Positions 38,681-44,630 of a stretch of DNA of 64,000 nucleotides are shown piece after piece. How positions within the stretch are numbered: the first letter of the stretch is position 1; each line of letters starts with the position of its first letter. The notes under the pieces are model-generated. The model was not told the origin of the DNA, did not search any database, and worked only from the letters and a program-made list of their open reading frames with translations. This DNA is from Hyphochytrium catenoides. Its lineage: Eukaryota; Protista; Hyphochytriomycota. Location of the stretch: assembly GCA_900088475.1 (NCBI GenBank), contig FLMG01003436.1, forward strand, positions 84,539-148,538, read 5' to 3'. A program made the position numbers and the translations under genes.

Positions 38681-41600
38681 ATGGGTGCGCGACACCGCCG
38701 TCACTGGAAAGATTTGGCTTATGAAGTGGAGAGAAGGCTGAGACCCAGGTAGGACGTCTCTGAAGGAAGTTATTGCAGCAATCTTGATGGGAACGTTGCT
38801 TGCCATGTTTCTCTCCCATTCTTTTCGTCCCCCGCTCCCGATATGATGTCTATTCAAGCGGGCTGGATATCGTGGCGCCACTCTCCCTCTCGTGGTACAA
38901 TGAGGCAGTCCCCGAACACCTCCACCTGCCCGCCTTCAAAGGCTGTTCAGACCCTTTGATCTTGCTCATCGGCAACTCCAGAGCCATCTGGGATCCCTTT
39001 GTAGAGAACTTGAGACAAGTAATGACACCTTATGCTGTACTCTATGTAACCTTGTAGTTAAGGGCAGAAACTCCAACACCGCCCATAGATCTTTCACTCA
39101 AACCTTCTCGTCAGTGCCTTATCTCTCCCTTCCTTCTTTTTAGGGCTCTCCCTCTCTCTGCCACCCTCGCTGTCTCGCTTCACATCCTCTAATCCTCTCG
39201 CTCTCTTCTCTCTCTCGATCTTGCTTCCTCTTCTCTCTCTCGATCTTTCTTCTTCTTCTTCTCTCTCTCTCACATACACACACACTCTCCCCCGTCTTTT
39301 GGTCTCTATCTACCTATCTAAATATCTATCTGTCTATCTATCTAACTATCTATCTCCTCTCTCTCTTGACTTATCTAGTCTCTCCATGAGGTTCTCAGCC
39401 TTCCCATGGCTCTTGTACATCCTATCCACTTCGCTCCCCAGGTCGTTGTCGCAAAATTTCTAATGTCTCTTTCACTATCAGAATGGGAAGGTGCCAAAGG
39501 ACCCAGTGAACTGCTACGTTCGAGACCAGGTTCTCTCGGCAACGAGGGACCTCCCTCCCTTGAACGCGGAGCAGGAAGAAGATGAAGCCCTGAAAGAGCT
39601 AGAGGTTGGAAGCAGGGGCACCTTTTCCTCTAGTCTCATGTCCCTCTCTTCGCTTGGGGCCTCTCCCTGTCTTCCAATGGCCCTAAGCCTAGTCAACTCC
39701 TCACCTCGGGAGGCCTGGGAGCGCTCCTGCTACTATTCCGTCCAAAAGCCTCTTACTGATGCTCGATTCTTTGCGCTCCTTATGCAGTTATCCTTCTACT
39801 GGTCACAAGATTGTGAACCTGGCAAGCTGATCGCGATACAGAGAATGGCACACATCGCGGGCATCGCCTTCCTCGACGAAGTACTACCCCTACTTTAAAC
39901 TGTCTGCCTGTCTGTTGCTTCAAAAATGCTGTCATTGAAGTTCGTCTCTATTTCCTTACGATTCTCCCTTGTCGTGTCCGCTGACCGTGCTTGGCATTCA
40001 AAACTCCATCATATCGATTGTGGGGCCTAATGTCTTGAGTAGGTAACTCACCTCTGCATCCACCCTGAGTACGGGCCGTGGGTGTCCCTGAGGGCTGCAG
40101 TTGTCATCAATGTTCCTGGACCGCCAGAAAAGCCTCTAGAACCTAGGAATCCAATGGATCAACAGACAGTAGAAAGAATCGCGGAGCTCTCCCGAAAAGC
40201 TATGGCAGCAGGTAAGCTTTCTGATCGCTTTCTATCTCTGTCTTCTGTCTGTCGCTGTTGATGACATTTACAGTCCGCATTAATGTTTCTCTGGTGTCAT
40301 TGACCTGCAATCTGCCTCCAATGCCCTTTGTTTTCCTCCGTGTATTCACCTCAGAGTATAGGCCAGGGCGTATAGACCCGGTGGCACTGAGCGATTCAAT
40401 GAAAGGAATGCTTCAACGCTGGCAGCTATGGATTGCAGCTCGAGTCGGCATCGCTCCAGGTCATCCCGCTATGTATTGCGACAACCAAATTCTCTATCAT
40501 TACTGCAATCATGATGGCAGCACCATTGGTACGTCAACCATATCTTCTACTTTATACCAGATTGCATCCATGCTGGACACATCTACCTTCCGGCGCCGTA
40601 ACGTCGCGTCCGCCTAGCAAAACAATAGATTCCACCTTCTGCATGTGCCGTTATTCGACCTCGAAAATGTCTGGGCTGCAATCGAAGACTGCAGATACTT
40701 GTCCGTCTGGAAGAAGGCCGAACCTGTCTTAAGCATTCCTACGGTCTCCCTATCTGTAGTCACGGTCATCCTGTCCATCTCTTAGGTCTCATATTCACCC
40801 TCCCCTAACCTTAATCTCCATTCTTTTGTGCTGGCTCTCTCCCCAAAGATATCCTTGAAGAGCTGGTAGCAAAGCCTTACCTCCCGCCTACGATATCCTT
40901 GCTGCAACATCCCGGCAAAGAGGTGATCAGGACGAGAGAAACAATGCTCTCCGTACTTAGGCGCTTAGCTAAAAAGGCAGAAGGCAGGAGAACAGCACTG
41001 CTTCTTTCCGGCGGCCTTGATACCTCAATTGTTGCCGAAGCGAAGGAGGATCCTTATGCGGATGGTCCTAGGTAAGCCTTCACCCTCGCCATCTCACTTT
41101 TCCATCGACAAACTTGTCGAGTCTCTGGACGTTTGCGATACCAACTCATTGCAGAAAGCTGCCAAGTAGTAATTGCAGCCGACATCCAATCTCCAAACTT
41201 TCTTATGTGACGAGCAAGTGTCTCAGCTAAAGGAGCTCGGCCATCTCTCGGTCTATTCTCTTACCTCTCTTGCCCCTATTCTGCTACTCCTCTTACCATG
41301 ATAACTGGCAGGATGGTCAACTTTGAAGAGTTTTTCACGGTTCGAGCTCACGTTTCGGGCACAGACGAGCCCTATGCATGCAGAATTGCAGAGAGACTTA
41401 AAACCAAGCATACCGTCATTTCTATCTCTATAGAAGAGCTTATTTCTTCATCACTCCAGCTCCTCATCTCCGCTCTGGTCTCTTTCGATCCTATGGAGCT
41501 GAGGAACAGCCTTGTCGTTGCTAGATCTATGCAAGAGGCAGCATCTAAGGGCTATGAGTGTATATTCACGGGAGATGCGGCGGACGAGCTCTTCGGTGGT

Positions 41601-42826
41601 ACGCTGCTATTGCTCGATAACGCTACGTTCCCGCTGGGCCTTCACTGTAGATACGACTCCTCATTGCTATAGACTTCTTGTACCCTAGGTTCCGCGCAAG
41701 TGGCCTGCTGGCCATCACCGAAAGTTATATCTCTGTGGCACTCAACCTATGTCTCTGTTCATAGGTTACAGCTTCACTCAGGGCCTTTCGGAGGAGAAGT
41801 TCAAATCCTATCAGCTCCATCTATCTCGTATCATGCAGTTCTCGGCTCCTAGAATAGGAGAGAAGCTAGGACTGGAAGTCCTATGTCCTTTCAAAGAACC
41901 GGAGATGATTGATCTAGCGCTAGCGCTCGAGAAAGAGCACCTAGTAGGAAAGCGCTTCCCCATCGATGACGGTACTTGCTCATCCCTGTCTGAATGCTAC
42001 TTTCCATTTCCATCCCTGACCTGGTAACCAGTACTCCTGGTTTCGCTGTGGTGACATACGCTTTTAAGTGTCTCCTGAGTTTTCAAAGGAGCTACAGACT
42101 GCACTTATGTTCCCGGCTTCAAGAACGTGCCCTTCGCTCACTGTTATGTGTCTCTCGCTTTTTTTTCTGCTTTTCCAGGAAGGACTCATGGCAAGCTCAT
42201 TCTTCGCTTAGCATTCCCTGAAGCCTCTTCTCAATGGAGAGGGAAGGATCCCATGGAAGTTGGAGCGGGGACCACTGAATTGAGGAATGGTTACTTCGAG
42301 AACTGGATGGAAGAGCGGGAGTTCAAAGAAAGGCAACGAGAGATCATGAAAGAGCAGTCTGTCTACATGCGAGATAAAGAACACCTCTTCTTCTTCCAGG
42401 AGTTTTTAAAAACCTTTGGCGCACTTGATAAGGTAAGAAGGGCCAAGAGTGATGAGAAAGAACAAGCAGGGGCAGAAAGGAGCAATGTTAGGCTTGAAGA
42501 AACTGTCAATGACAGCTCGAATGAGAGAAGGGGCCGGATGAGAAGGTGAAGAGAGGAAGACGAGAGGAATAATGATGTCCGTGCCCAGTCGCTGTTCTCA
42601 CGCTAGGCGTACTCAGGTGCCACGTGGTAGAACTGGCCAAGATCCCTGTCCTGGCTGTGGTTTCGACTTATCCTCTCCGGAACAGGACTTCTGCACCCTC
42701 TGTGGACATTATCCTGCTAAAGTAACTGAAAAGAGCAGTGAATATGCCCGAGAGCAGTTCAGAACCTTTCTCGAGGAAAAGCAAGTGCTCCTTGAAGAAG
42801 TAGGAGAGGGAAAAGTCACGCTCTAG
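38681..42826 (+). CDS. Fusion protein: N-terminal CblC/MMACHC (cobalamin-processing) domain + asparagine-synthase C-terminal (PP-loop) domain + C4 Zn ribbon; about 11 exons
   Basis: CblC motifs: GLDIVAPLSLSWYN, LIGNSRAIWDPF, DPVNCYV, IAIQRMAHIAGIAFLD, LCIHPEYGPWVSLRAAVV, WQLWIAAR, YCDNQILYHY. These join in frame across intron 40529-40848 to LLLSGGLDTSIV, FDPMELRNS, FTGDAADELFG|GY, GKLILRLAF, WRGKDPMEVGAG and CPGC...CTLC. Confidence 0.85.
39120..39385. repeat. CT-rich / (CT)n and (CTAT)n microsatellite tract inside an intron of the CblC fusion gene
   Basis: ctctctctct, tcttcttctt and tatctatc/ctatctatct runs. Confidence 0.8.
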
Positions 42827-42937: not shown

Positions 42938-44630
42938 TTAAAGCAGGACGTGTGAATGCTTCTTCCAAAACTCGTCACCGATCAGATCTACGTGAAGGAC
43001 CTCCAGCGTGGTCTTAGGTTTCTTCTTTTTCTTCAGCTTCTTAGCTGGTCGGTTGGCGGATGGGCTTTGTTCTTTCTCTGAAATGGTATGCATGTTGATT
43101 TCATCTTCGACTCCTTTGGTGGCCACCCCATCAATGAGTGTGCTTTCCTTGTTCTCTTGCTCCGTCTCCTCTTTGTCTTCCTCCTCCAGTTCCTCTTCTA
43201 TGAGCCTAATAGGAATTGACCCCTTCCGGTCAACCTCTGGCATGAAGTTGTAGTTCATCGCAAACCGAGAGAAAAGGAGCTCGTGCTTTTCTTTCGAGAC
43301 CGTCGTCCGAAGCTGAGCCTCCGCCTCTTTGGGAGAAAGATGGCCTGTAGAGCAGGACAGAGTCTTAGGCTTGTTCCTCAGGAAGTAGTTTATAGACCTT
43401 TAATATCAGGAGCATGGATCAACATGAGAAGAGACAGCGGGCAACGTGCTGACCTCAGGGGTAGAGAGTGAGCGGAAAGAACATAAAGCGGACGGGGCAG
43501 AGTGCAGAAGTGATGCAGTTTCCTGGAAGGGCGTATAGTAACCGGAGCGGAAGAGCTCATTCTGTAAGAGAGACTGGAGAAGAGCGATGCGATGGTTATG
43601 CAGATGGCAGCTAGCCTTACCCATTGTTACTAGCGCCCAAAAGCAAGTATTATAGAGGTTGTTGATGTGGCAGTCCGCTTGCCTCCAGCTGAAATAGTCT
43701 CTAACGCACTTAACGGCAATGTGAAAACGCAAACCTTGTGAGACCAAAGGTATGGCCTTTCTTCTGGCCCCCATTCACACTTTCCCGGCCCCATTCACAC
43801 TTTCCCGCTCGCACGGTAGAAGTATTGCCGGTGCCTCTCTAGTCGCTCGTCTTTTATGGATGTTTCTTTCTTCATTGCTCCCTTTACTTACTCTCTGTCT
43901 TCCATGTTCGGCATGCTCTATCTAAAATCCTTTAGCTGGAGACATACCTTCTCATTGGGATAGCAGACGACTCTTCCATCAAAGCTCGGTGGGTACATCA
44001 GGGCGGTCTCAGGGAAGAAAGATCCCCAGTAGTAGACGTACCAGGAAGTGAAGATGGAGACGAATGTAGAACATATCTTGGAGGCGCGGCGGTTGTACAG
44101 AGTCGAGCCCTTTCGCAGTAGGAAGCTGTACTCGTCGCTCTGTCCGTAAGCCATCATCACGTCTGTGAATTCTAACATAACCCCCAAGGCCGCCTAGGTA
44201 TAGGGAGCAGAAGCATGAGGAGCGCTTTTGGTCAAAGAAGGCTCTAGGCTGAGTTGAAGGATAACAGGTCCAACGGGTGTGGAGTGAGCAATAGAGTTAG
44301 AGTACCACTTCATCAGTAGGGGAACATTGCTGTGGCGCTTGCGCTATTAACGTAAGCAGCAGGAAGAGTAATCATTGTATCTGGTTGACCTTGTTCATAA
44401 GCTTTATGGCACGAGGATCATTAGGTTTTGCGAAGGAATGTGCTTCAGAGAACCTAGTACGACGAAGAGAGGTCTAACGTTAACGCGCTAGTCAAGAGAA
44501 TCAAGGGGTCTATGACATGGTCCTACTTATGGAAGCCCCGACCATCCAGCCTGACAACAAGCCAAGTGTCCGGTAGGAGTGAGTCATCTTGTTCAAACTT
44601 TCTCACGTATTGGAACCGGGAGTTTGCCAT
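42938..44630 (-). CDS. THG1: tRNA(His) guanylyltransferase
   Basis: [93 protein letters not shown]. Confidence 0.96.
43766..43808. repeat. 21-bp tandem duplication in a THG1 intron
   Basis: gcccc(c)attcacactttcccg occurs twice in tandem. Confidence 0.85.

What the first reader, a model, noticed from the sequence alone, without database searches (positions are those of the whole stretch)
38681..42826. CblC/MMACHC fused in frame to an asparagine-synthase-type adenylating domain: candidate new vitamin B12 modifying or repair enzyme
Seen in sequence: exons 38681-40528 encode a complete CblC-like domain (GLDIVAPLSLSWYN, DPVN, QRMAHIAGIAF, CIHPEYGPWVSLR, WQLWIAAR, YCDNQILYHY). A phase-1 intron (donor GTACGT at 40529, branch-like CCTAAC near 40804, acceptor AG at 40848) joins ...YCNHDGSTI-D-ILEELVAK... 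without a stop to a PP-loop domain (LSGGLDTS, TGDAADELFGGY, GKLILR, WRxKDPME). Established: CblC is normally a stand-alone flavin/glutathione-dependent decyanase/dealkylase that binds incoming cobalamin. AsnB-type synthetase domains adenylate a carboxylate and form an amide. Inference: tethering the two could amidate corrin side-chain carboxylates (repairing hydrolysed B12 monocarboxylic acids) or ligate an amine during cobamide salvage or remodelling. I know of no described CblC-AsnB fusion, but I could not search for one.
Basis: partly seen in the sequence, partly recalled or inferred. Interest (0 to 1): 0.9.

Follow-up and report, generated by a model that had tools for sequence, protein, structure and literature searches.

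The report
CblC fused to corrinoid-linked amide ligase
This is one real, conserved gene that joins the vitamin B12-processing protein CblC/MMACHC to an asparagine-synthetase-like ATP-using enzyme; that enzyme's family sits in B12 salvage gene clusters in archaea and bacteria, so it probably marks an undescribed step of B12 handling.

Summary
Eleven GT..AG exons (38681-42826, + strand) splice into a 655-aa protein. The N-terminal part is a MMACHC/CblC domain. The C-terminal part is a glutaminase-less Asn_synthase PP-loop domain ending in a C4 zinc ribbon.

No RNA run was available, so the 40528/40849 junction is not shown by transcripts here. It is supported by comparison:
- The same fusion is annotated in more than 25 oomycete species (Phytophthora, Pythium, Globisporangium, Lagenidium, Aphanomyces).
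- It is a single uninterrupted ORF on three other eukaryotic contigs.
- The linker aligns across the junction, and the fusions form one clade.
- AlphaFold2 folds the Aphanomyces orthologue as one compact body (pLDDT 93, pTM 0.88).

The C-terminal domain belongs to a distinct, uncurated family of about 330 aa. In 23 of 48 informative prokaryotic loci it lies within 3 kb of btuF/btuC, cbiB, cobD, cobT, cobS, cobY, cbiZ, hemD or DUF71-B12 genes. It is also fused to BtuF-like and CobY-like domains. Stand-alone copies occur in B12-using eukaryotes.

Best reading: an ATP-dependent corrinoid carboxylate amide ligase, probably re-amidating side chains. The chemistry is inferred, not shown. I found no paper describing it. 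The scan had noted the C-terminal half of this same stretch (s1-345933), not other DNA.

The parts
38681..38748 (+). Exon 1 with the start ATG. Encodes the N-terminal helix of the CblC domain.
   Evidence: model. Aligns with the N-terminal helix of the oomycete fusion proteins.
38859..39018 (+). Exon 2, CblC domain (GLDIVAPLSLSWYN...IGNSRAIWDPF).
   Evidence: Pfam MMACHC weak hit, E 0.16, profile positions 4-24. Y and N of the YN motif are invariant in fusion homologues.
39482..39604 (+). Exon 3, CblC domain (DPVN motif).
   Evidence: The donor GTTGGA is weak. Splicing is favoured by orthologue spacing and by 1-nt indels at 39730 and 39732 in strain X4.
39788..39880 (+). Exon 4, CblC domain (QRMAHIAGIAF).
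   Evidence: Aligned to human MMACHC AQTAAHVAGAAY through the family profile.
40043..40211 (+). Exon 5, CblC domain (CIHPEYGPWVSLR). Contains the Arg that aligns with the Arg of the human CIHPRFGGWFAIR motif (Arg161 by my recollection of the numbering).
   Evidence: Pfam MMACHC E 8.5e-4. PDB MMACHC chains E 5e-4, with alignment.
40355..40528 (+). Exon 6, C-terminal part of the CblC domain (W..W...R...P.HP..Y.D.QI.YHY) and the start of the linker.
   Evidence: R, Q, H and Y of this motif are invariant in fusion homologues.
40529..40848 (+). Phase-1 intron that joins the two halves (GTACGT...AAG, 320 nt).
   Evidence: Read-through stops at 40617. An AAG acceptor is also used by intron 1. No transcript evidence was available.
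40849..41071 (+). Exon 7: linker (DILEELVAKPYLPP...) and the PP-loop LSGGLDTS (41004-41027).
   Evidence: The linker aligns with the linkers of the oomycete fusion proteins across the junction. PP-loop S, G, G and D are invariant in the family.
41312..41598 (+). Exon 8: Asn_synthase core (FDPMELRN, TGDAADELFGG).
   Evidence: Pfam Asn_synthase E 3.4e-9. This was the query that retrieved the family.
41765..41971 (+). Exon 9: Asn_synthase domain. Carries the family motif M.FS...L where AsnB has YD..RA[ND][KR].
42179..42432 (+). Exon 10: GKLILR and WRGKDPMEVGAG motifs (the residues aligning with the Lys of the AsnB KHILR motif and with the WRQKEQ motif) and the EHL..F helix.
42617..42826 (+). Exon 11: C4 zinc ribbon (CPGC 42647-42658, CTLC 42692-42703), C-terminal helix and stop.
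   Evidence: Weak Pfam zinc-ribbon hits. The four Cys are invariant in 36 family members.

Best explanation
One gene (38681-42826, + strand, 11 exons) encodes a 655-aa bifunctional protein.

The N-terminal domain, about 260 aa, is a CblC/MMACHC homologue. In animals that protein takes up incoming cobalamin base-off and removes its upper ligand.

The C-terminal part, about 370 aa, is a glutaminase-less member of the asparagine-synthetase (PP-loop ATP pyrophosphatase) superfamily with a terminal C4 zinc ribbon. It belongs to a distinct, uncharacterised family whose substrate is a corrinoid.

Proposed mechanism, by analogy with AsnB chemistry (inferred, not shown):
1. The PP-loop domain adenylates a free carboxylate on the corrinoid (ATP -> acyl-AMP + PPi).
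2. Ammonia, free or supplied by a partner, attacks and regenerates the amide.

The enzyme would thus repair or complete corrinoids whose acetamide or propionamide side chains are de-amidated or were never amidated. In this organism and in oomycetes the ligase is tethered to CblC, so the bound cobalamin could be proof-read or repaired while it is processed.

What is shown: the architecture, its conservation, intact adenylation motifs, and the genomic linkage of the family to corrinoid transport and salvage genes.
What is inferred: that the corrinoid is the substrate, which carboxylate is used, and which nucleophile attacks.
For: Fusion is real:
- Clean 11-exon model.
- Full-length homologues: Aphanomyces cochlioides KAG9405926.1 at E 5e-130 and Globisporangium ultimum K3WWW8.
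- Fusions in Aphanomyces species and in Phytophthora, Pythium, Lagenidium and Nothophytophthora.
- Uninterrupted fusion ORFs on contigs L082, L083 and L084.
- Linker homology across the splice junction.
- Fusions form one clade, SH-aLRT 95, that includes the window.
- AlphaFold2 of the Aphanomyces protein gives pLDDT 93 and pTM 0.88. Foldseek matches human MMACHC (TM 0.68-0.75) and the AsnB/ASNS synthetase domain (E 2e-12).

Intact enzyme:
- 43 of the 44 positions conserved in at least 90% of aligned family members are identical in the window protein (the N-terminal Met column is trivial); the one difference is Ile->Met.
- These include the PP-loop, the conserved R of FDPMELRN, TGDxADE, GKxxLR and RxKxPxE.

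Corrinoid link of the C-terminal family:
- Only 177 hits in 1.8 billion proteins at E<=1e-3 with exon 8, so it is a distinct subfamily.
- 23 of 48 non-Nitrosopumilales loci have BtuF-like, BtuC-like, CbiB, CobD, CobT, CobS, CobY-like, CbiZ, HemD or DUF71 genes within 3 kb. All CbiB, CobT, CobS, CobY, CbiZ and DUF71 hits lie in that inner zone.
- Dehalococcoidia operon: btuC - ABC ATPase - cbiB - cobD - X - cobT - cobS (L024, L033). In L033 a cobalamin riboswitch lies upstream.
- Thermoplasmata locus: BtuC, BtuF, CbiA/CobQ-type, BtuF, X.
- The nine DUF71 neighbours carry the GE[YF]H signature of the DUF71-B12 subgroup (PMC3541065).
- Independent fusions to Peripla_BP_2 (BtuF-like) in Prasinoderma, Chara, Adiantum and two unnamed contigs, and to CobY-like NTP_transf_3 in Thermoprotei and Atribacteria.
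- Named stand-alone eukaryotic members are from non-Dikarya fungi, Acytostelium, Galdieria, Mucochytrium and Cyanophora. No Dikarya, animal or angiosperm appears among the best 120. This matches lineages reported to use B12 (PMC8085122; PMC11439496).
- The same genome was noted to carry class II RNR, MetH and MMAB (unchecked).

Ammonia chemistry: one fusion to an N-terminal glutamine amidase domain.

Not an Asp-specific enzyme: the YD..RA[ND][KR] stretch shared by E. coli AsnB and human ASNS is replaced by M.FS...L in the family.
Against: - No transcript evidence for the junction in this organism. The genome is compact: the convergent Thg1 gene ends about 110 nt from this gene's stop. A 330-nt intergenic spacer is therefore not impossible.
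- No biochemical data exist for any member. Neither substrate nor nucleophile can be read from sequence.
- In 33 Nitrosopumilales-type loci the gene sits among housekeeping genes (Alba, Rpb6, S25e, deoxyhypusine synthase), with no cob genes nearby. In two Nitrososphaeria loci it follows gatCAB, which could hint at asparagine or glutamine metabolism.
- Only one of ten bacterial loci scanned showed a cobalamin riboswitch.
- A fern (Adiantum) carries a BtuF-like fusion although vascular plants have no known B12 enzymes.
- Eukaryotic stand-alone genes have no B12 neighbours.
- The role I assign to the AsnB Asp/Arg residues rests on my memory of the AsnB literature. I could not confirm it in a paper.
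Confidence: 0.45

Rival explanations
1. The ligase works on the f side chain or nucleotide loop rather than repairing amides. It would adenylate cobyric acid, or a CbiZ product, and ligate aminopropanol(-phosphate) or another amine. That would make it a soluble helper or alternative in cobamide remodelling.
For: The tightest prokaryotic neighbours are remodelling and loop-assembly genes: cbiZ, cbiB, cobD, cobT, cobS and cobY. There is a fusion to a CobY-like domain. The frequent partner DUF71-B12 was predicted to act at the CbiZ step (PMC3541065).
Against: The family co-occurs with cbiB in the same operon (L024, L033), so it does not replace it. No cobT/cobS/cbiB-type gene was seen beside the three stand-alone eukaryotic genes checked. 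That oomycetes, non-Dikarya fungi and dictyostelids lack a nucleotide-loop pathway is my own knowledge, not tested here. In the fusion the ligase is tethered to CblC, which handles complete cobalamin.
Confidence: 0.15
2. The C-terminal domain is an ordinary ammonia-dependent asparagine synthetase, or another amide ligase for a non-corrinoid metabolite. Its link to B12 would then be regulatory or coincidental.
For: Closest solved structures and profiles are AsnB/ASNS. Databases name members 'asparagine synthase'. gatCAB lies upstream in two loci. Nitrosopumilales have a housekeeping context.
Against: All NCBIfam AsnB models score far below their cut-offs (about 100-150 bits against 499). There is no glutaminase domain. 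The YD..RA[ND][KR] stretch conserved between E. coli and human enzymes is replaced. There are three independent fusions to corrinoid-handling domains, and 23 of 48 loci sit in corrinoid gene clusters. The phyletic pattern follows B12 use, not asparagine need.
Confidence: 0.1
3. The PP-loop domain uses adenylation for chemistry other than amide formation on the corrinoid. Examples are ATP-driven amide hydrolysis as a CbiZ substitute, lactam or lactone handling, or sulfur or other group transfer.
For: The AsnB superfamily includes lactam-forming enzymes (beta-lactam synthetase, CarA), and more distant PP-loop hits are sulfur transferases (LarE, TtuA). A CbiZ-like role was cautiously proposed for the neighbouring DUF71-B12 family.
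Against: The residues that align with those needed for acyl-adenylate formation and amine attack in AsnB are all kept. No conserved Cys suitable for sulfur transfer stands outside the zinc ribbon among the invariant positions. The family sits next to CbiZ in two loci rather than replacing it.
Confidence: 0.12
4. In this window the two halves are separate genes. CblC would end at the stop at 40617, and an independent ligase would start at the ATG at 40944. The spliced fusion would be an artefact of model building.
For: There are no transcript data. The genome is compact. An in-frame ATG lies 20 codons before the SGG of the PP-loop.
Against: The 31 codons between the acceptor and that ATG align with the conserved linker of the orthologous fusion proteins. 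The window sequence nests inside the monophyletic fusion clade. Fusion ORFs are uninterrupted elsewhere. A start at 40944 would cut the helix that precedes the PP-loop in stand-alone members.
Confidence: 0.06

Closest known systems
MMACHC / CblC (Pfam PF16690; PDB 3SC0, 3SOM, 5UOS)
   Same: The N-terminal ~260 aa share the fold (TM 0.68-0.75). They also share the signature motifs WYN, DPV, A.TAAHVAG-like and CIHP..G.W...R, including the Arg that aligns with the Arg of the human FAIR motif.
   Different: It is divergent: single sequences score 23.6-26.6 bits, just under Pfam's cut-off of 27. It is not stand-alone but covalently joined to a PP-loop ligase. Flavin/GSH-dependent decyanase or dealkylase activity was not tested.
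Asparagine synthetase B / human ASNS (PDB 1CT9, 6GQ3), synthetase domain
   Same: Same fold and the same adenylation machinery: PP-loop SGGLD[ST], the conserved Arg of the TTIR/MELR motif, the Lys of the KxxLR motif and the R.K[ED] motif.
   Different: There is no N-terminal Ntn glutaminase domain. The Glu of the AsnB SGEGSDE motif is Asp here (TGDGADE). The YD..RA[ND][KR] stretch is replaced. It has an added C-terminal C4 zinc ribbon. Its genomic context is corrinoid salvage, not amino-acid synthesis.
Beta-lactam synthetase / carbapenam synthetase CarA / TsnB9
   Same: These are AsnB-superfamily enzymes that have been re-purposed to adenylate a carboxylate on a specialised metabolite.
   Different: They keep a (dead or altered) N-terminal glutaminase-like domain and form intramolecular lactams or hydroxamates. 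Their sequence similarity is weaker (E 1e-13 to 1e-14 against 1e-36 for AsnB).
DUF71-B12 subgroup of PF01902 (de Crecy-Lagard et al. 2012, PMC3541065)
   Same: It is also a PP-loop ATPase of unknown reaction, predicted from gene clustering with btuFCD and cbiB to act in B12 salvage. It is the immediate neighbour of the present family in nine loci.
   Different: It is a different family (Diphthami_syn_2 rather than Asn_synthase). The 2012 paper does not mention the AsnB-like family in the B12 clusters.
CbiA/CobB and CobQ/CbiP (corrin side-chain amidotransferases of de novo synthesis)
   Same: They carry out the reaction type proposed here: ATP-dependent conversion of corrin carboxylates to amides.
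   Different: The fold is unrelated (CbiA/AAA_26 plus GATase_3 domains). From my own knowledge they use phosphorylation chemistry with ADP + Pi and a fused glutaminase. They act on biosynthetic intermediates. They are absent from eukaryotes.
BtuF / CBA1-type corrinoid-binding proteins
   Same: Peripla_BP_2 domains are fused to the same ligase family in green-lineage eukaryotes. This parallels the CblC fusion: a binding module plus the ligase.
   Different: It is a different binding module. Whether these Peripla_BP_2 domains are CBA1 orthologues was not tested.

Membership tests
MMACHC / CblC (PF16690) | Sequence match to the family profile at or above Pfam's gathering score (27 bits) | tested here: not met
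   Window exons score 19.4 and 11.9 bits separately. Orthologous N-terminal domains score 23.6-26.6 bits. These are just below the cut-off, which is why annotations miss the domain.
MMACHC / CblC (PF16690) | Homology shown by profile and by fold to solved MMACHC structures | tested here: met
   The profile of seven fusion N-domains hits only MMACHC-family chains (human MMACHC and its C. elegans homologue), E 4e-10. Window exon 5 alone gives E 5e-4. The AlphaFold2 model matches 5UOS, 3SOM and 3SBY at TM 0.68-0.75.
MMACHC / CblC (PF16690) | Conserved core motifs, including the Arg of CIHP..G.W...R (Arg161 in human by my recollection) | tested here: met
   Alignments. The Arg is invariant in seven fusion homologues. 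A second Arg in the W..W...R motif is also invariant. Its equivalence to human Arg206 rests on my recollection of the human sequence.
MMACHC / CblC (PF16690) | Binds cobalamin base-off and removes the upper ligand (decyanation or dealkylation with flavin/GSH) | not testable with these tools
   Needs protein and spectroscopy.
Asparagine synthetase B (glutamine-hydrolysing; TIGR01536 / PRK09431) | N-terminal class II (Ntn, Cys1) glutaminase domain | tested here: not met
   The N-terminal domain is MMACHC-like instead. Stand-alone members start about 30 aa before the PP-loop.
Asparagine synthetase B (glutamine-hydrolysing; TIGR01536 / PRK09431) | Score above the equivalog cut-offs | tested here: not met
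   Scores of 72-154 bits against cut-offs of 267 and 499 bits, for six members including the Aphanomyces fusion.
Asparagine synthetase B (glutamine-hydrolysing; TIGR01536 / PRK09431) | Aspartate-binding stretch YD..RA[ND][KR] shared by the E. coli and human enzymes | tested here: not met
   It is replaced by M.FS...L in the family profile and by MQFSAPR in the window. The functional role of the AsnB residues is from memory and was not confirmed in a paper.
Asn_synthase domain superfamily (PF00733), PP-loop ATP pyrophosphatases | PP-loop SGGxD[ST] and the adenylation motifs (conserved Arg, xGxGxDE, KxxLR, RxK[ED]) | tested here: met
   Pfam E 3.4e-9 on exon 8. All motifs are present and invariant in the family. 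43 of 44 conserved positions are kept in the window.
Corrinoid-associated AsnB-like family with C4 zinc ribbon (defined here; alignment A1) | About 330-aa Asn_synthase core with FDPMELRN, TGDGADELF.GY, M.FS, GK..LR, WR.KDP.E.G.G and EHL motifs and a terminal CxxC...CxxCG ribbon | tested here: met
   The window protein carries each motif. phmmer against members gives E 1e-40 to 1e-130.
Corrinoid-associated AsnB-like family with C4 zinc ribbon (defined here; alignment A1) | Genomic or domain linkage to corrinoid transport, salvage or processing | tested here: met
   In the window the linkage is the CblC fusion itself. Elsewhere: 23 of 48 loci, one riboswitch, and BtuF-like and CobY-like fusions.
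DUF71-B12 (PF01902 subgroup) | Diphthami_syn_2 domain with the ENGE[FY]H-type motif | tested here: not met
   The window protein has no PF01902 match. DUF71-B12 is a neighbour of the family in prokaryotes, not the same family.

The most novel reading that the evidence does not exclude
The AsnB-like zinc-ribbon family is a previously unrecognised corrinoid repair or completion enzyme, present in archaea, some bacteria and B12-using eukaryotes. It would re-amidate de-amidated cobalamin or cobamide side chains using ATP and ammonia, perhaps dividing the side chains with the neighbouring DUF71-B12 PP-loop enzyme. The CblC fusion in oomycetes and in this organism would then be a built-in proof-reading station. 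Incoming B12 would be stripped of its upper ligand and chemically repaired before delivery to MetH, MCM or class II RNR.
Probability: 0.35. Interest if true: 0.9.

Novelty: new variant of a known kind. Interest (0 to 1): 0.8.

Why it matters
Intracellular B12 handling in eukaryotes is thought to be covered by the cbl genes known from human disease (CblC, CblD and others). Here a further enzyme is physically fused to CblC in a whole class of eukaryotes, including major crop pathogens. It also occurs stand-alone in most other B12-using protists and early-diverging fungi.

The same family sits inside B12 salvage operons of Dehalococcoidia, Acidobacteria, Bathyarchaeia, Thermoplasmata and others. 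There it lies next to the still-unsolved DUF71-B12 gene.

Three independent lines point to a missing, testable step of corrinoid metabolism: gene fusion, gene neighbourhood and phyletic pattern. The candidate substrates are a short list: B12 mono-carboxylic acids, incompletely amidated cobyrinates and cobyric acid.

If it is a repair amidase, it would be a new case of cofactor damage control. It would bear on which environmental B12 analogues are usable by microbes and algae. It would also give annotation pipelines a way to stop calling these proteins 'asparagine synthase (glutamine-hydrolysing)'.

Tried and rejected
- RNA evidence. No RNA run was listed for the gene. The 'any' search gave only DNA-type runs and soil metagenomes. 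Laying four of them showed contigs that carry the introns and no joints. The splice junction therefore stays unverified at RNA level.
- Curated families. NCBIfam has no specific model; it gives only sub-threshold AsnB-type hits. Exon 8 alone has no PDB sequence hit. Exon 6 alone has none either.
- Literature. Searches for an MMACHC / asparagine synthase fusion, asparagine synthase plus cobamide salvage, DUF71-B12 follow-ups, B12 monocarboxylate repair, CBA1 plus asparagine, and asparagine synthase plus corrinoid plus btuF found nothing on this family. A search for the AsnB active-site residues also found nothing.
- Riboswitches. Only L033 of ten bacterial loci has one. Many of those contigs are short.
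- Nitrosopumilales synteny (33 loci). It is housekeeping and uninformative.
- Neighbours of stand-alone eukaryotic genes (Spizellomyces, Galdieria, Acytostelium). No B12 genes.
- Poly-A tails on the short fusion contigs L082 and L084. None seen, so I cannot say they are transcripts.
- MMACHC-like domains in the long BtuF-type fusion proteins. None found.
- The 716-aa alternative model (exon 3/4 unspliced). Rejected on orthologue spacing and strain indels.
- An alternative acceptor at about 40785. Rejected by my own hand translation of the sequence (not a tool result), because it runs into a stop.

Full report
**1. What is in the sequence**

The region 38681-42826 (+ strand) can be assembled into 11 exons. 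All ten introns start with GT and end with AG (110-463 nt). The exons are 38681-38748, 38859-39018, 39482-39604, 39788-39880, 40043-40211, 40355-40528, 40849-41071, 41312-41598, 41765-41971, 42179-42432 and 42617-42826. Together they give an uninterrupted 655-codon reading frame.

The intron 40529-40848 is phase 1, with donor GTACGT and acceptor AAG. Intron 1 uses an AAG acceptor too. Splicing joins ...HDGSTI to DILEELVAK.... Reading through the donor meets a stop at 40617.

The exon 3 / exon 4 split has a weak donor (GTTGGA), and the sequence between them is an open frame. I prefer the spliced version for two reasons:
- The distance between the DPV and A.TAAH-like motifs then equals that of the orthologues.
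- A roughly 95%-identical strain in a soil metagenome has two separate 1-nt deletions inside that segment (39730, 39732). The other listed single-base indels of that strain also lie in predicted introns.

**2. Domain identity**

*C-terminal half.* Exon 8 alone matches Pfam Asn_synthase (E 3.4e-9).

*N-terminal half.*
- Exon 5 alone matches human MMACHC chains in the PDB (E 5e-4), aligning CIHPEYGPWVSLR with CIHPRFGGWFAIR.
- A profile of the N-terminal domains of seven homologous fusion proteins hits only MMACHC-family chains (human MMACHC and its C. elegans homologue) in the PDB (E 4e-10).
- Single sequences stay just under Pfam's MMACHC cut-off: 23.6-26.6 bits against 27. This explains why public annotations show only PF00733 for these proteins.

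*Structure.* AlphaFold2 was run on the Aphanomyces cochlioides orthologue with a 36-sequence alignment. It gives mean pLDDT 93 and pTM 0.88, which means a confidently packed two-domain body. Foldseek matches the C-terminal part to the E. coli AsnB and human ASNS synthetase domains (E 2e-12), and next to beta-lactam synthetase and CarA. It matches the N-terminal part to human MMACHC (TM 0.68-0.75 by target).

**3. Is the fusion real?**

No RNA run could be listed. The four runs laid on the gene are DNA contigs that include the introns. The junction in this organism therefore rests on comparison.

- An exhaustive HMMER search with exon 8 was followed by a local phmmer of the spliced model against the hits. 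This found full-length counterparts: Aphanomyces cochlioides KAG9405926.1 (629 aa, E 5e-130), Globisporangium ultimum K3WWW8 (687 aa), and several unnamed contig proteins.
- Word-based searches with the N-terminal regions added further species: Aphanomyces stellatus, A. invadans and A. astaci; eleven Phytophthora species; Pythium oligandrum and P. brassicae; Lagenidium giganteum; and Nothophytophthora.
- On contigs L082, L083 and L084 the fusion is a single uninterrupted ORF.
- The window's residues just after the acceptor (DILEELVAKPYLPPTISLLQHPGKEVIRTRE) align with the linker of the oomycete proteins, with no length anomaly.
- In a maximum-likelihood tree of the ligase domain, the nine CblC fusions form one clade (SH-aLRT 95). 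The window sequence nests inside it, and its nearest relative is Aphanomyces at 47% identity.

I put the two-gene alternative at about 6%.

**4. The C-terminal domain belongs to a distinct, corrinoid-linked family**

*A distinct family.* Only 177 of 1.84 billion representative proteins match exon 8 at E<=1e-3. Most full-length hits are stand-alone proteins of 310-370 aa. They share these conserved motifs:
- LSGGLDTS
- FDPMELRN
- TGDGADELFAGY
- M.FS...L
- GK..LR
- WR.KDPIE.GSG
- EHL.YY
- a terminal CxxC...CxxCG zinc ribbon

The window protein keeps 43 of the 44 positions that are at least 90% conserved. NCBIfam has no model for the family; AsnB equivalogs score far below their cut-offs. A profile search finds more than 1000 members at E<=1e-30. 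They are named 'hypothetical', 'asparagine synthase-related' or, wrongly, 'asparagine synthase (glutamine-hydrolysing)'.

*Gene neighbourhoods.* I fetched 80 prokaryotic loci and one more. I called ORFs, clustered the neighbours and annotated cluster representatives with Pfam.

The 33 Nitrosopumilales-type loci share a housekeeping synteny and are uninformative. Of the other 48 loci, 23 carry at least one corrinoid-linked gene within 3 kb. Those loci come from Thermoplasmata, Hadarchaeota, Bathyarchaeia, Heimdallarchaeota, Nezhaarchaeales, Methanophagales, a Methanobacteriota MAG, a Thaumarchaeota MAG, Dehalococcoidia, an Acidobacteriota (Sulfotelmatobacter) MAG, a 'Candidatus Acidoferrum' MAG and others. 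All hits to CbiB, CobT, CobS, CobY-like, CbiZ and DUF71 fall in that inner zone rather than in the outer flanks.

Examples:
- Dehalococcoidia L024 and L033: btuC - ABC ATPase - cbiB - cobD(aminotransferase) - X - cobT - cobS. L033 has a cobalamin riboswitch upstream at L033:2051-2194.
- Sulfotelmatobacter L052 and Bathyarchaeota L073: cbiZ next to X.
- Bathyarchaeota L014 and L040: X - DUF71 - cobT-like - cobS - cobY/ECF-S.
- Thermoplasmata L001: btuC, btuF, cbiA/cobQ-type, btuF, X.
- Methanophagales: hemD next to X.

*The DUF71 neighbour.* All nine DUF71 neighbours carry the GE[YF]H signature. De Crecy-Lagard et al. (PMC3541065) used that signature to define the DUF71-B12 subgroup. They predicted the subgroup to act in B12 salvage from its clustering with btuCDF and cbiB. 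That paper does not mention the AsnB-like family in these clusters.

*Independent domain fusions*:
- Peripla_BP_2 (BtuF-like) + ligase in Prasinoderma coloniale (also an MMETSP transcript), Chara braunii, the fern Adiantum capillus-veneris and two unnamed contig clusters.
- CobY-like NTP_transf_3 + ligase in a Thermoprotei MAG and an Atribacteria MAG.
- N-terminal glutamine amidase + ligase on a metagenome contig.

*Phyletic pattern.* Named eukaryotic stand-alone members come from:
- Mortierellomycota, Umbelopsis, Basidiobolus, chytrids and Allomyces;
- Acytostelium, Galdieria, Mucochytrium and Cyanophora.

No Dikarya, animal or angiosperm appears among the best 120. These are lineages reported to use cobalamin (PMC8085122). 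Galdieria encodes MCM and CblA (PMC11439496). Earlier scan notes report class II RNR, MetH and MMAB in this same genome (I did not check them).

*Tree.* All eukaryotic sequences group together, with two Thermoplasmata sequences as sister (SH-aLRT 99 for the joint clade).

**5. How it most likely works**

*Shown.* The adenylation machinery of AsnB is intact. That covers the PP-loop, the conserved Arg, the xGxGxDE motif (with Asp where AsnB has the Glu of SGEGSDE), the Lys of KxxLR and the R.K[ED] motif. There is no glutaminase domain. The YD..RA[ND][KR] stretch shared by E. coli AsnB and human ASNS is replaced. From my recollection that stretch holds the aspartate-binding Asp and Arg, but I could not confirm this in a paper.

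*Inferred.*
1. The enzyme adenylates a carboxylate of a corrinoid.
2. It then forms an amide.

The eukaryotes that carry the family are, to my knowledge, not known to build the nucleotide loop (not tested here). In the fusion the partner domain is CblC, which holds complete cobalamin. On complete cobalamin the only carboxylates that can arise are de-amidated a-e or g side chains. I therefore commit to re-amidation of corrinoid side-chain carboxylates with ammonia as the most likely reaction (about 35-45%).

My confidence by level of claim:
- The family acts on a corrinoid by ATP-dependent adenylation: about 70%.
- The window encodes a fusion protein: about 90%.

The frequent pairing with DUF71-B12, another PP-loop ligase-type enzyme, suggests the two may split the work. 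This would be analogous to CbiA and CobQ in de novo synthesis, but it is speculation.

**6. Evidence that complicates the picture**

- Nitrosopumilales loci have no cob context.
- gatCAB lies upstream in two Nitrososphaeria loci.
- Only one riboswitch was found in ten bacterial loci.
- A fern carries the BtuF-like fusion although vascular plants have no known B12 enzymes.
- Eukaryotic stand-alone genes have no B12 neighbours.

**7. Comparison with what is known, and novelty**

The two domains are members of known superfamilies: MMACHC by profile and fold, and Asn_synthase / PP-loop. The protein is not an asparagine synthetase B. It lacks the glutaminase domain, fails the equivalog cut-offs and lacks the conserved YD..RA stretch.

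The nearest functional precedents are:
- DUF71-B12, which has the same clusters but a different family and an unsolved reaction;
- CbiA/CobQ, which has the proposed reaction type but an unrelated fold.

I found no paper that describes the AsnB-like family, its B12 linkage or the CblC fusion. The fusion proteins themselves have been in public databases for years without the CblC domain being annotated.

I rate this a new variant of a known kind. It is of high interest because it makes a missing step of B12 metabolism directly testable.

Noticed in passing
window 42938-44187 (- strand): A convergent, intron-containing tRNA-His guanylyltransferase (Thg1) gene. Pieces match Pfam Thg1 (E 1.6e-28) and Thg1C. 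The ORF holding its last exon (42938-43258, - strand) ends about 110 nt from the stop of the fusion gene, so 3' ends are tightly packed in this genome.
   Followed up: partly
window 39140-39380 (intron 2): A CT-rich microsatellite-like tract. The reads tool skipped 39237-39366 as repeat. A related soil strain (X4) carries a 25-nt insertion behind 39202.
   Followed up: no
runs X4, X5, X7, X8 (soil and rhizosphere metagenomes): Soil and rhizosphere metagenomes hold this gene or a relative's conserved part. Run X4 carries a variant mostly 90-99% identical across the whole gene, introns included. A close relative of the organism therefore appears to live in soil.
   Followed up: partly
P0055/P0175 (Prasinoderma), P0062 (Chara braunii GBG72075.1), P0134 (Adiantum KAI5072249.1), P0083, P0084: Large green-lineage proteins (900-1484 aa) join Peripla_BP_2 (BtuF-like) domains to the same ligase family. 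They may be related to the CBA1-type B12 uptake proteins reported in algae and, puzzlingly, in vascular plants (PMC11439496). CBA1 orthology was not tested.
   Followed up: partly
P0092 (ENA metagenome contig): A fusion of an N-terminal glutamine amidase domain (PF09764) with the ligase family. It is a possible built-in ammonia source, replacing the missing glutaminase domain.
   Followed up: no
L002:8978-10960 (Thermoplasmata MAG): The family member here is 660 aa. About 340 N-terminal residues have no Pfam match and lie directly downstream of a btuF-like gene. This may be another unrecognised corrinoid-binding module.
   Followed up: partly
L015, L017 (Nitrososphaeria MAGs): The ligase gene follows gatC-like, gatA (Amidase) and gatB genes on the same strand. 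This is the only context that hints at amide or asparagine-glutamine metabolism rather than corrinoids.
   Followed up: no
P0044 (Cyanophora paradoxa), P0005 ([Myrmecia] bisecta): Further eukaryotic architectures: ligase + DUF924 in Cyanophora, and ligase + C2/PATROL1-like/GRAM in a 1867-aa green-algal model. The second may be a merged gene model.
   Followed up: no
tree: All eukaryotic ligase domains group with two Thermoplasmata sequences (SH-aLRT 99), apart from the other archaea and bacteria, including Asgard members. The direction of any transfer was not tested.
   Followed up: no
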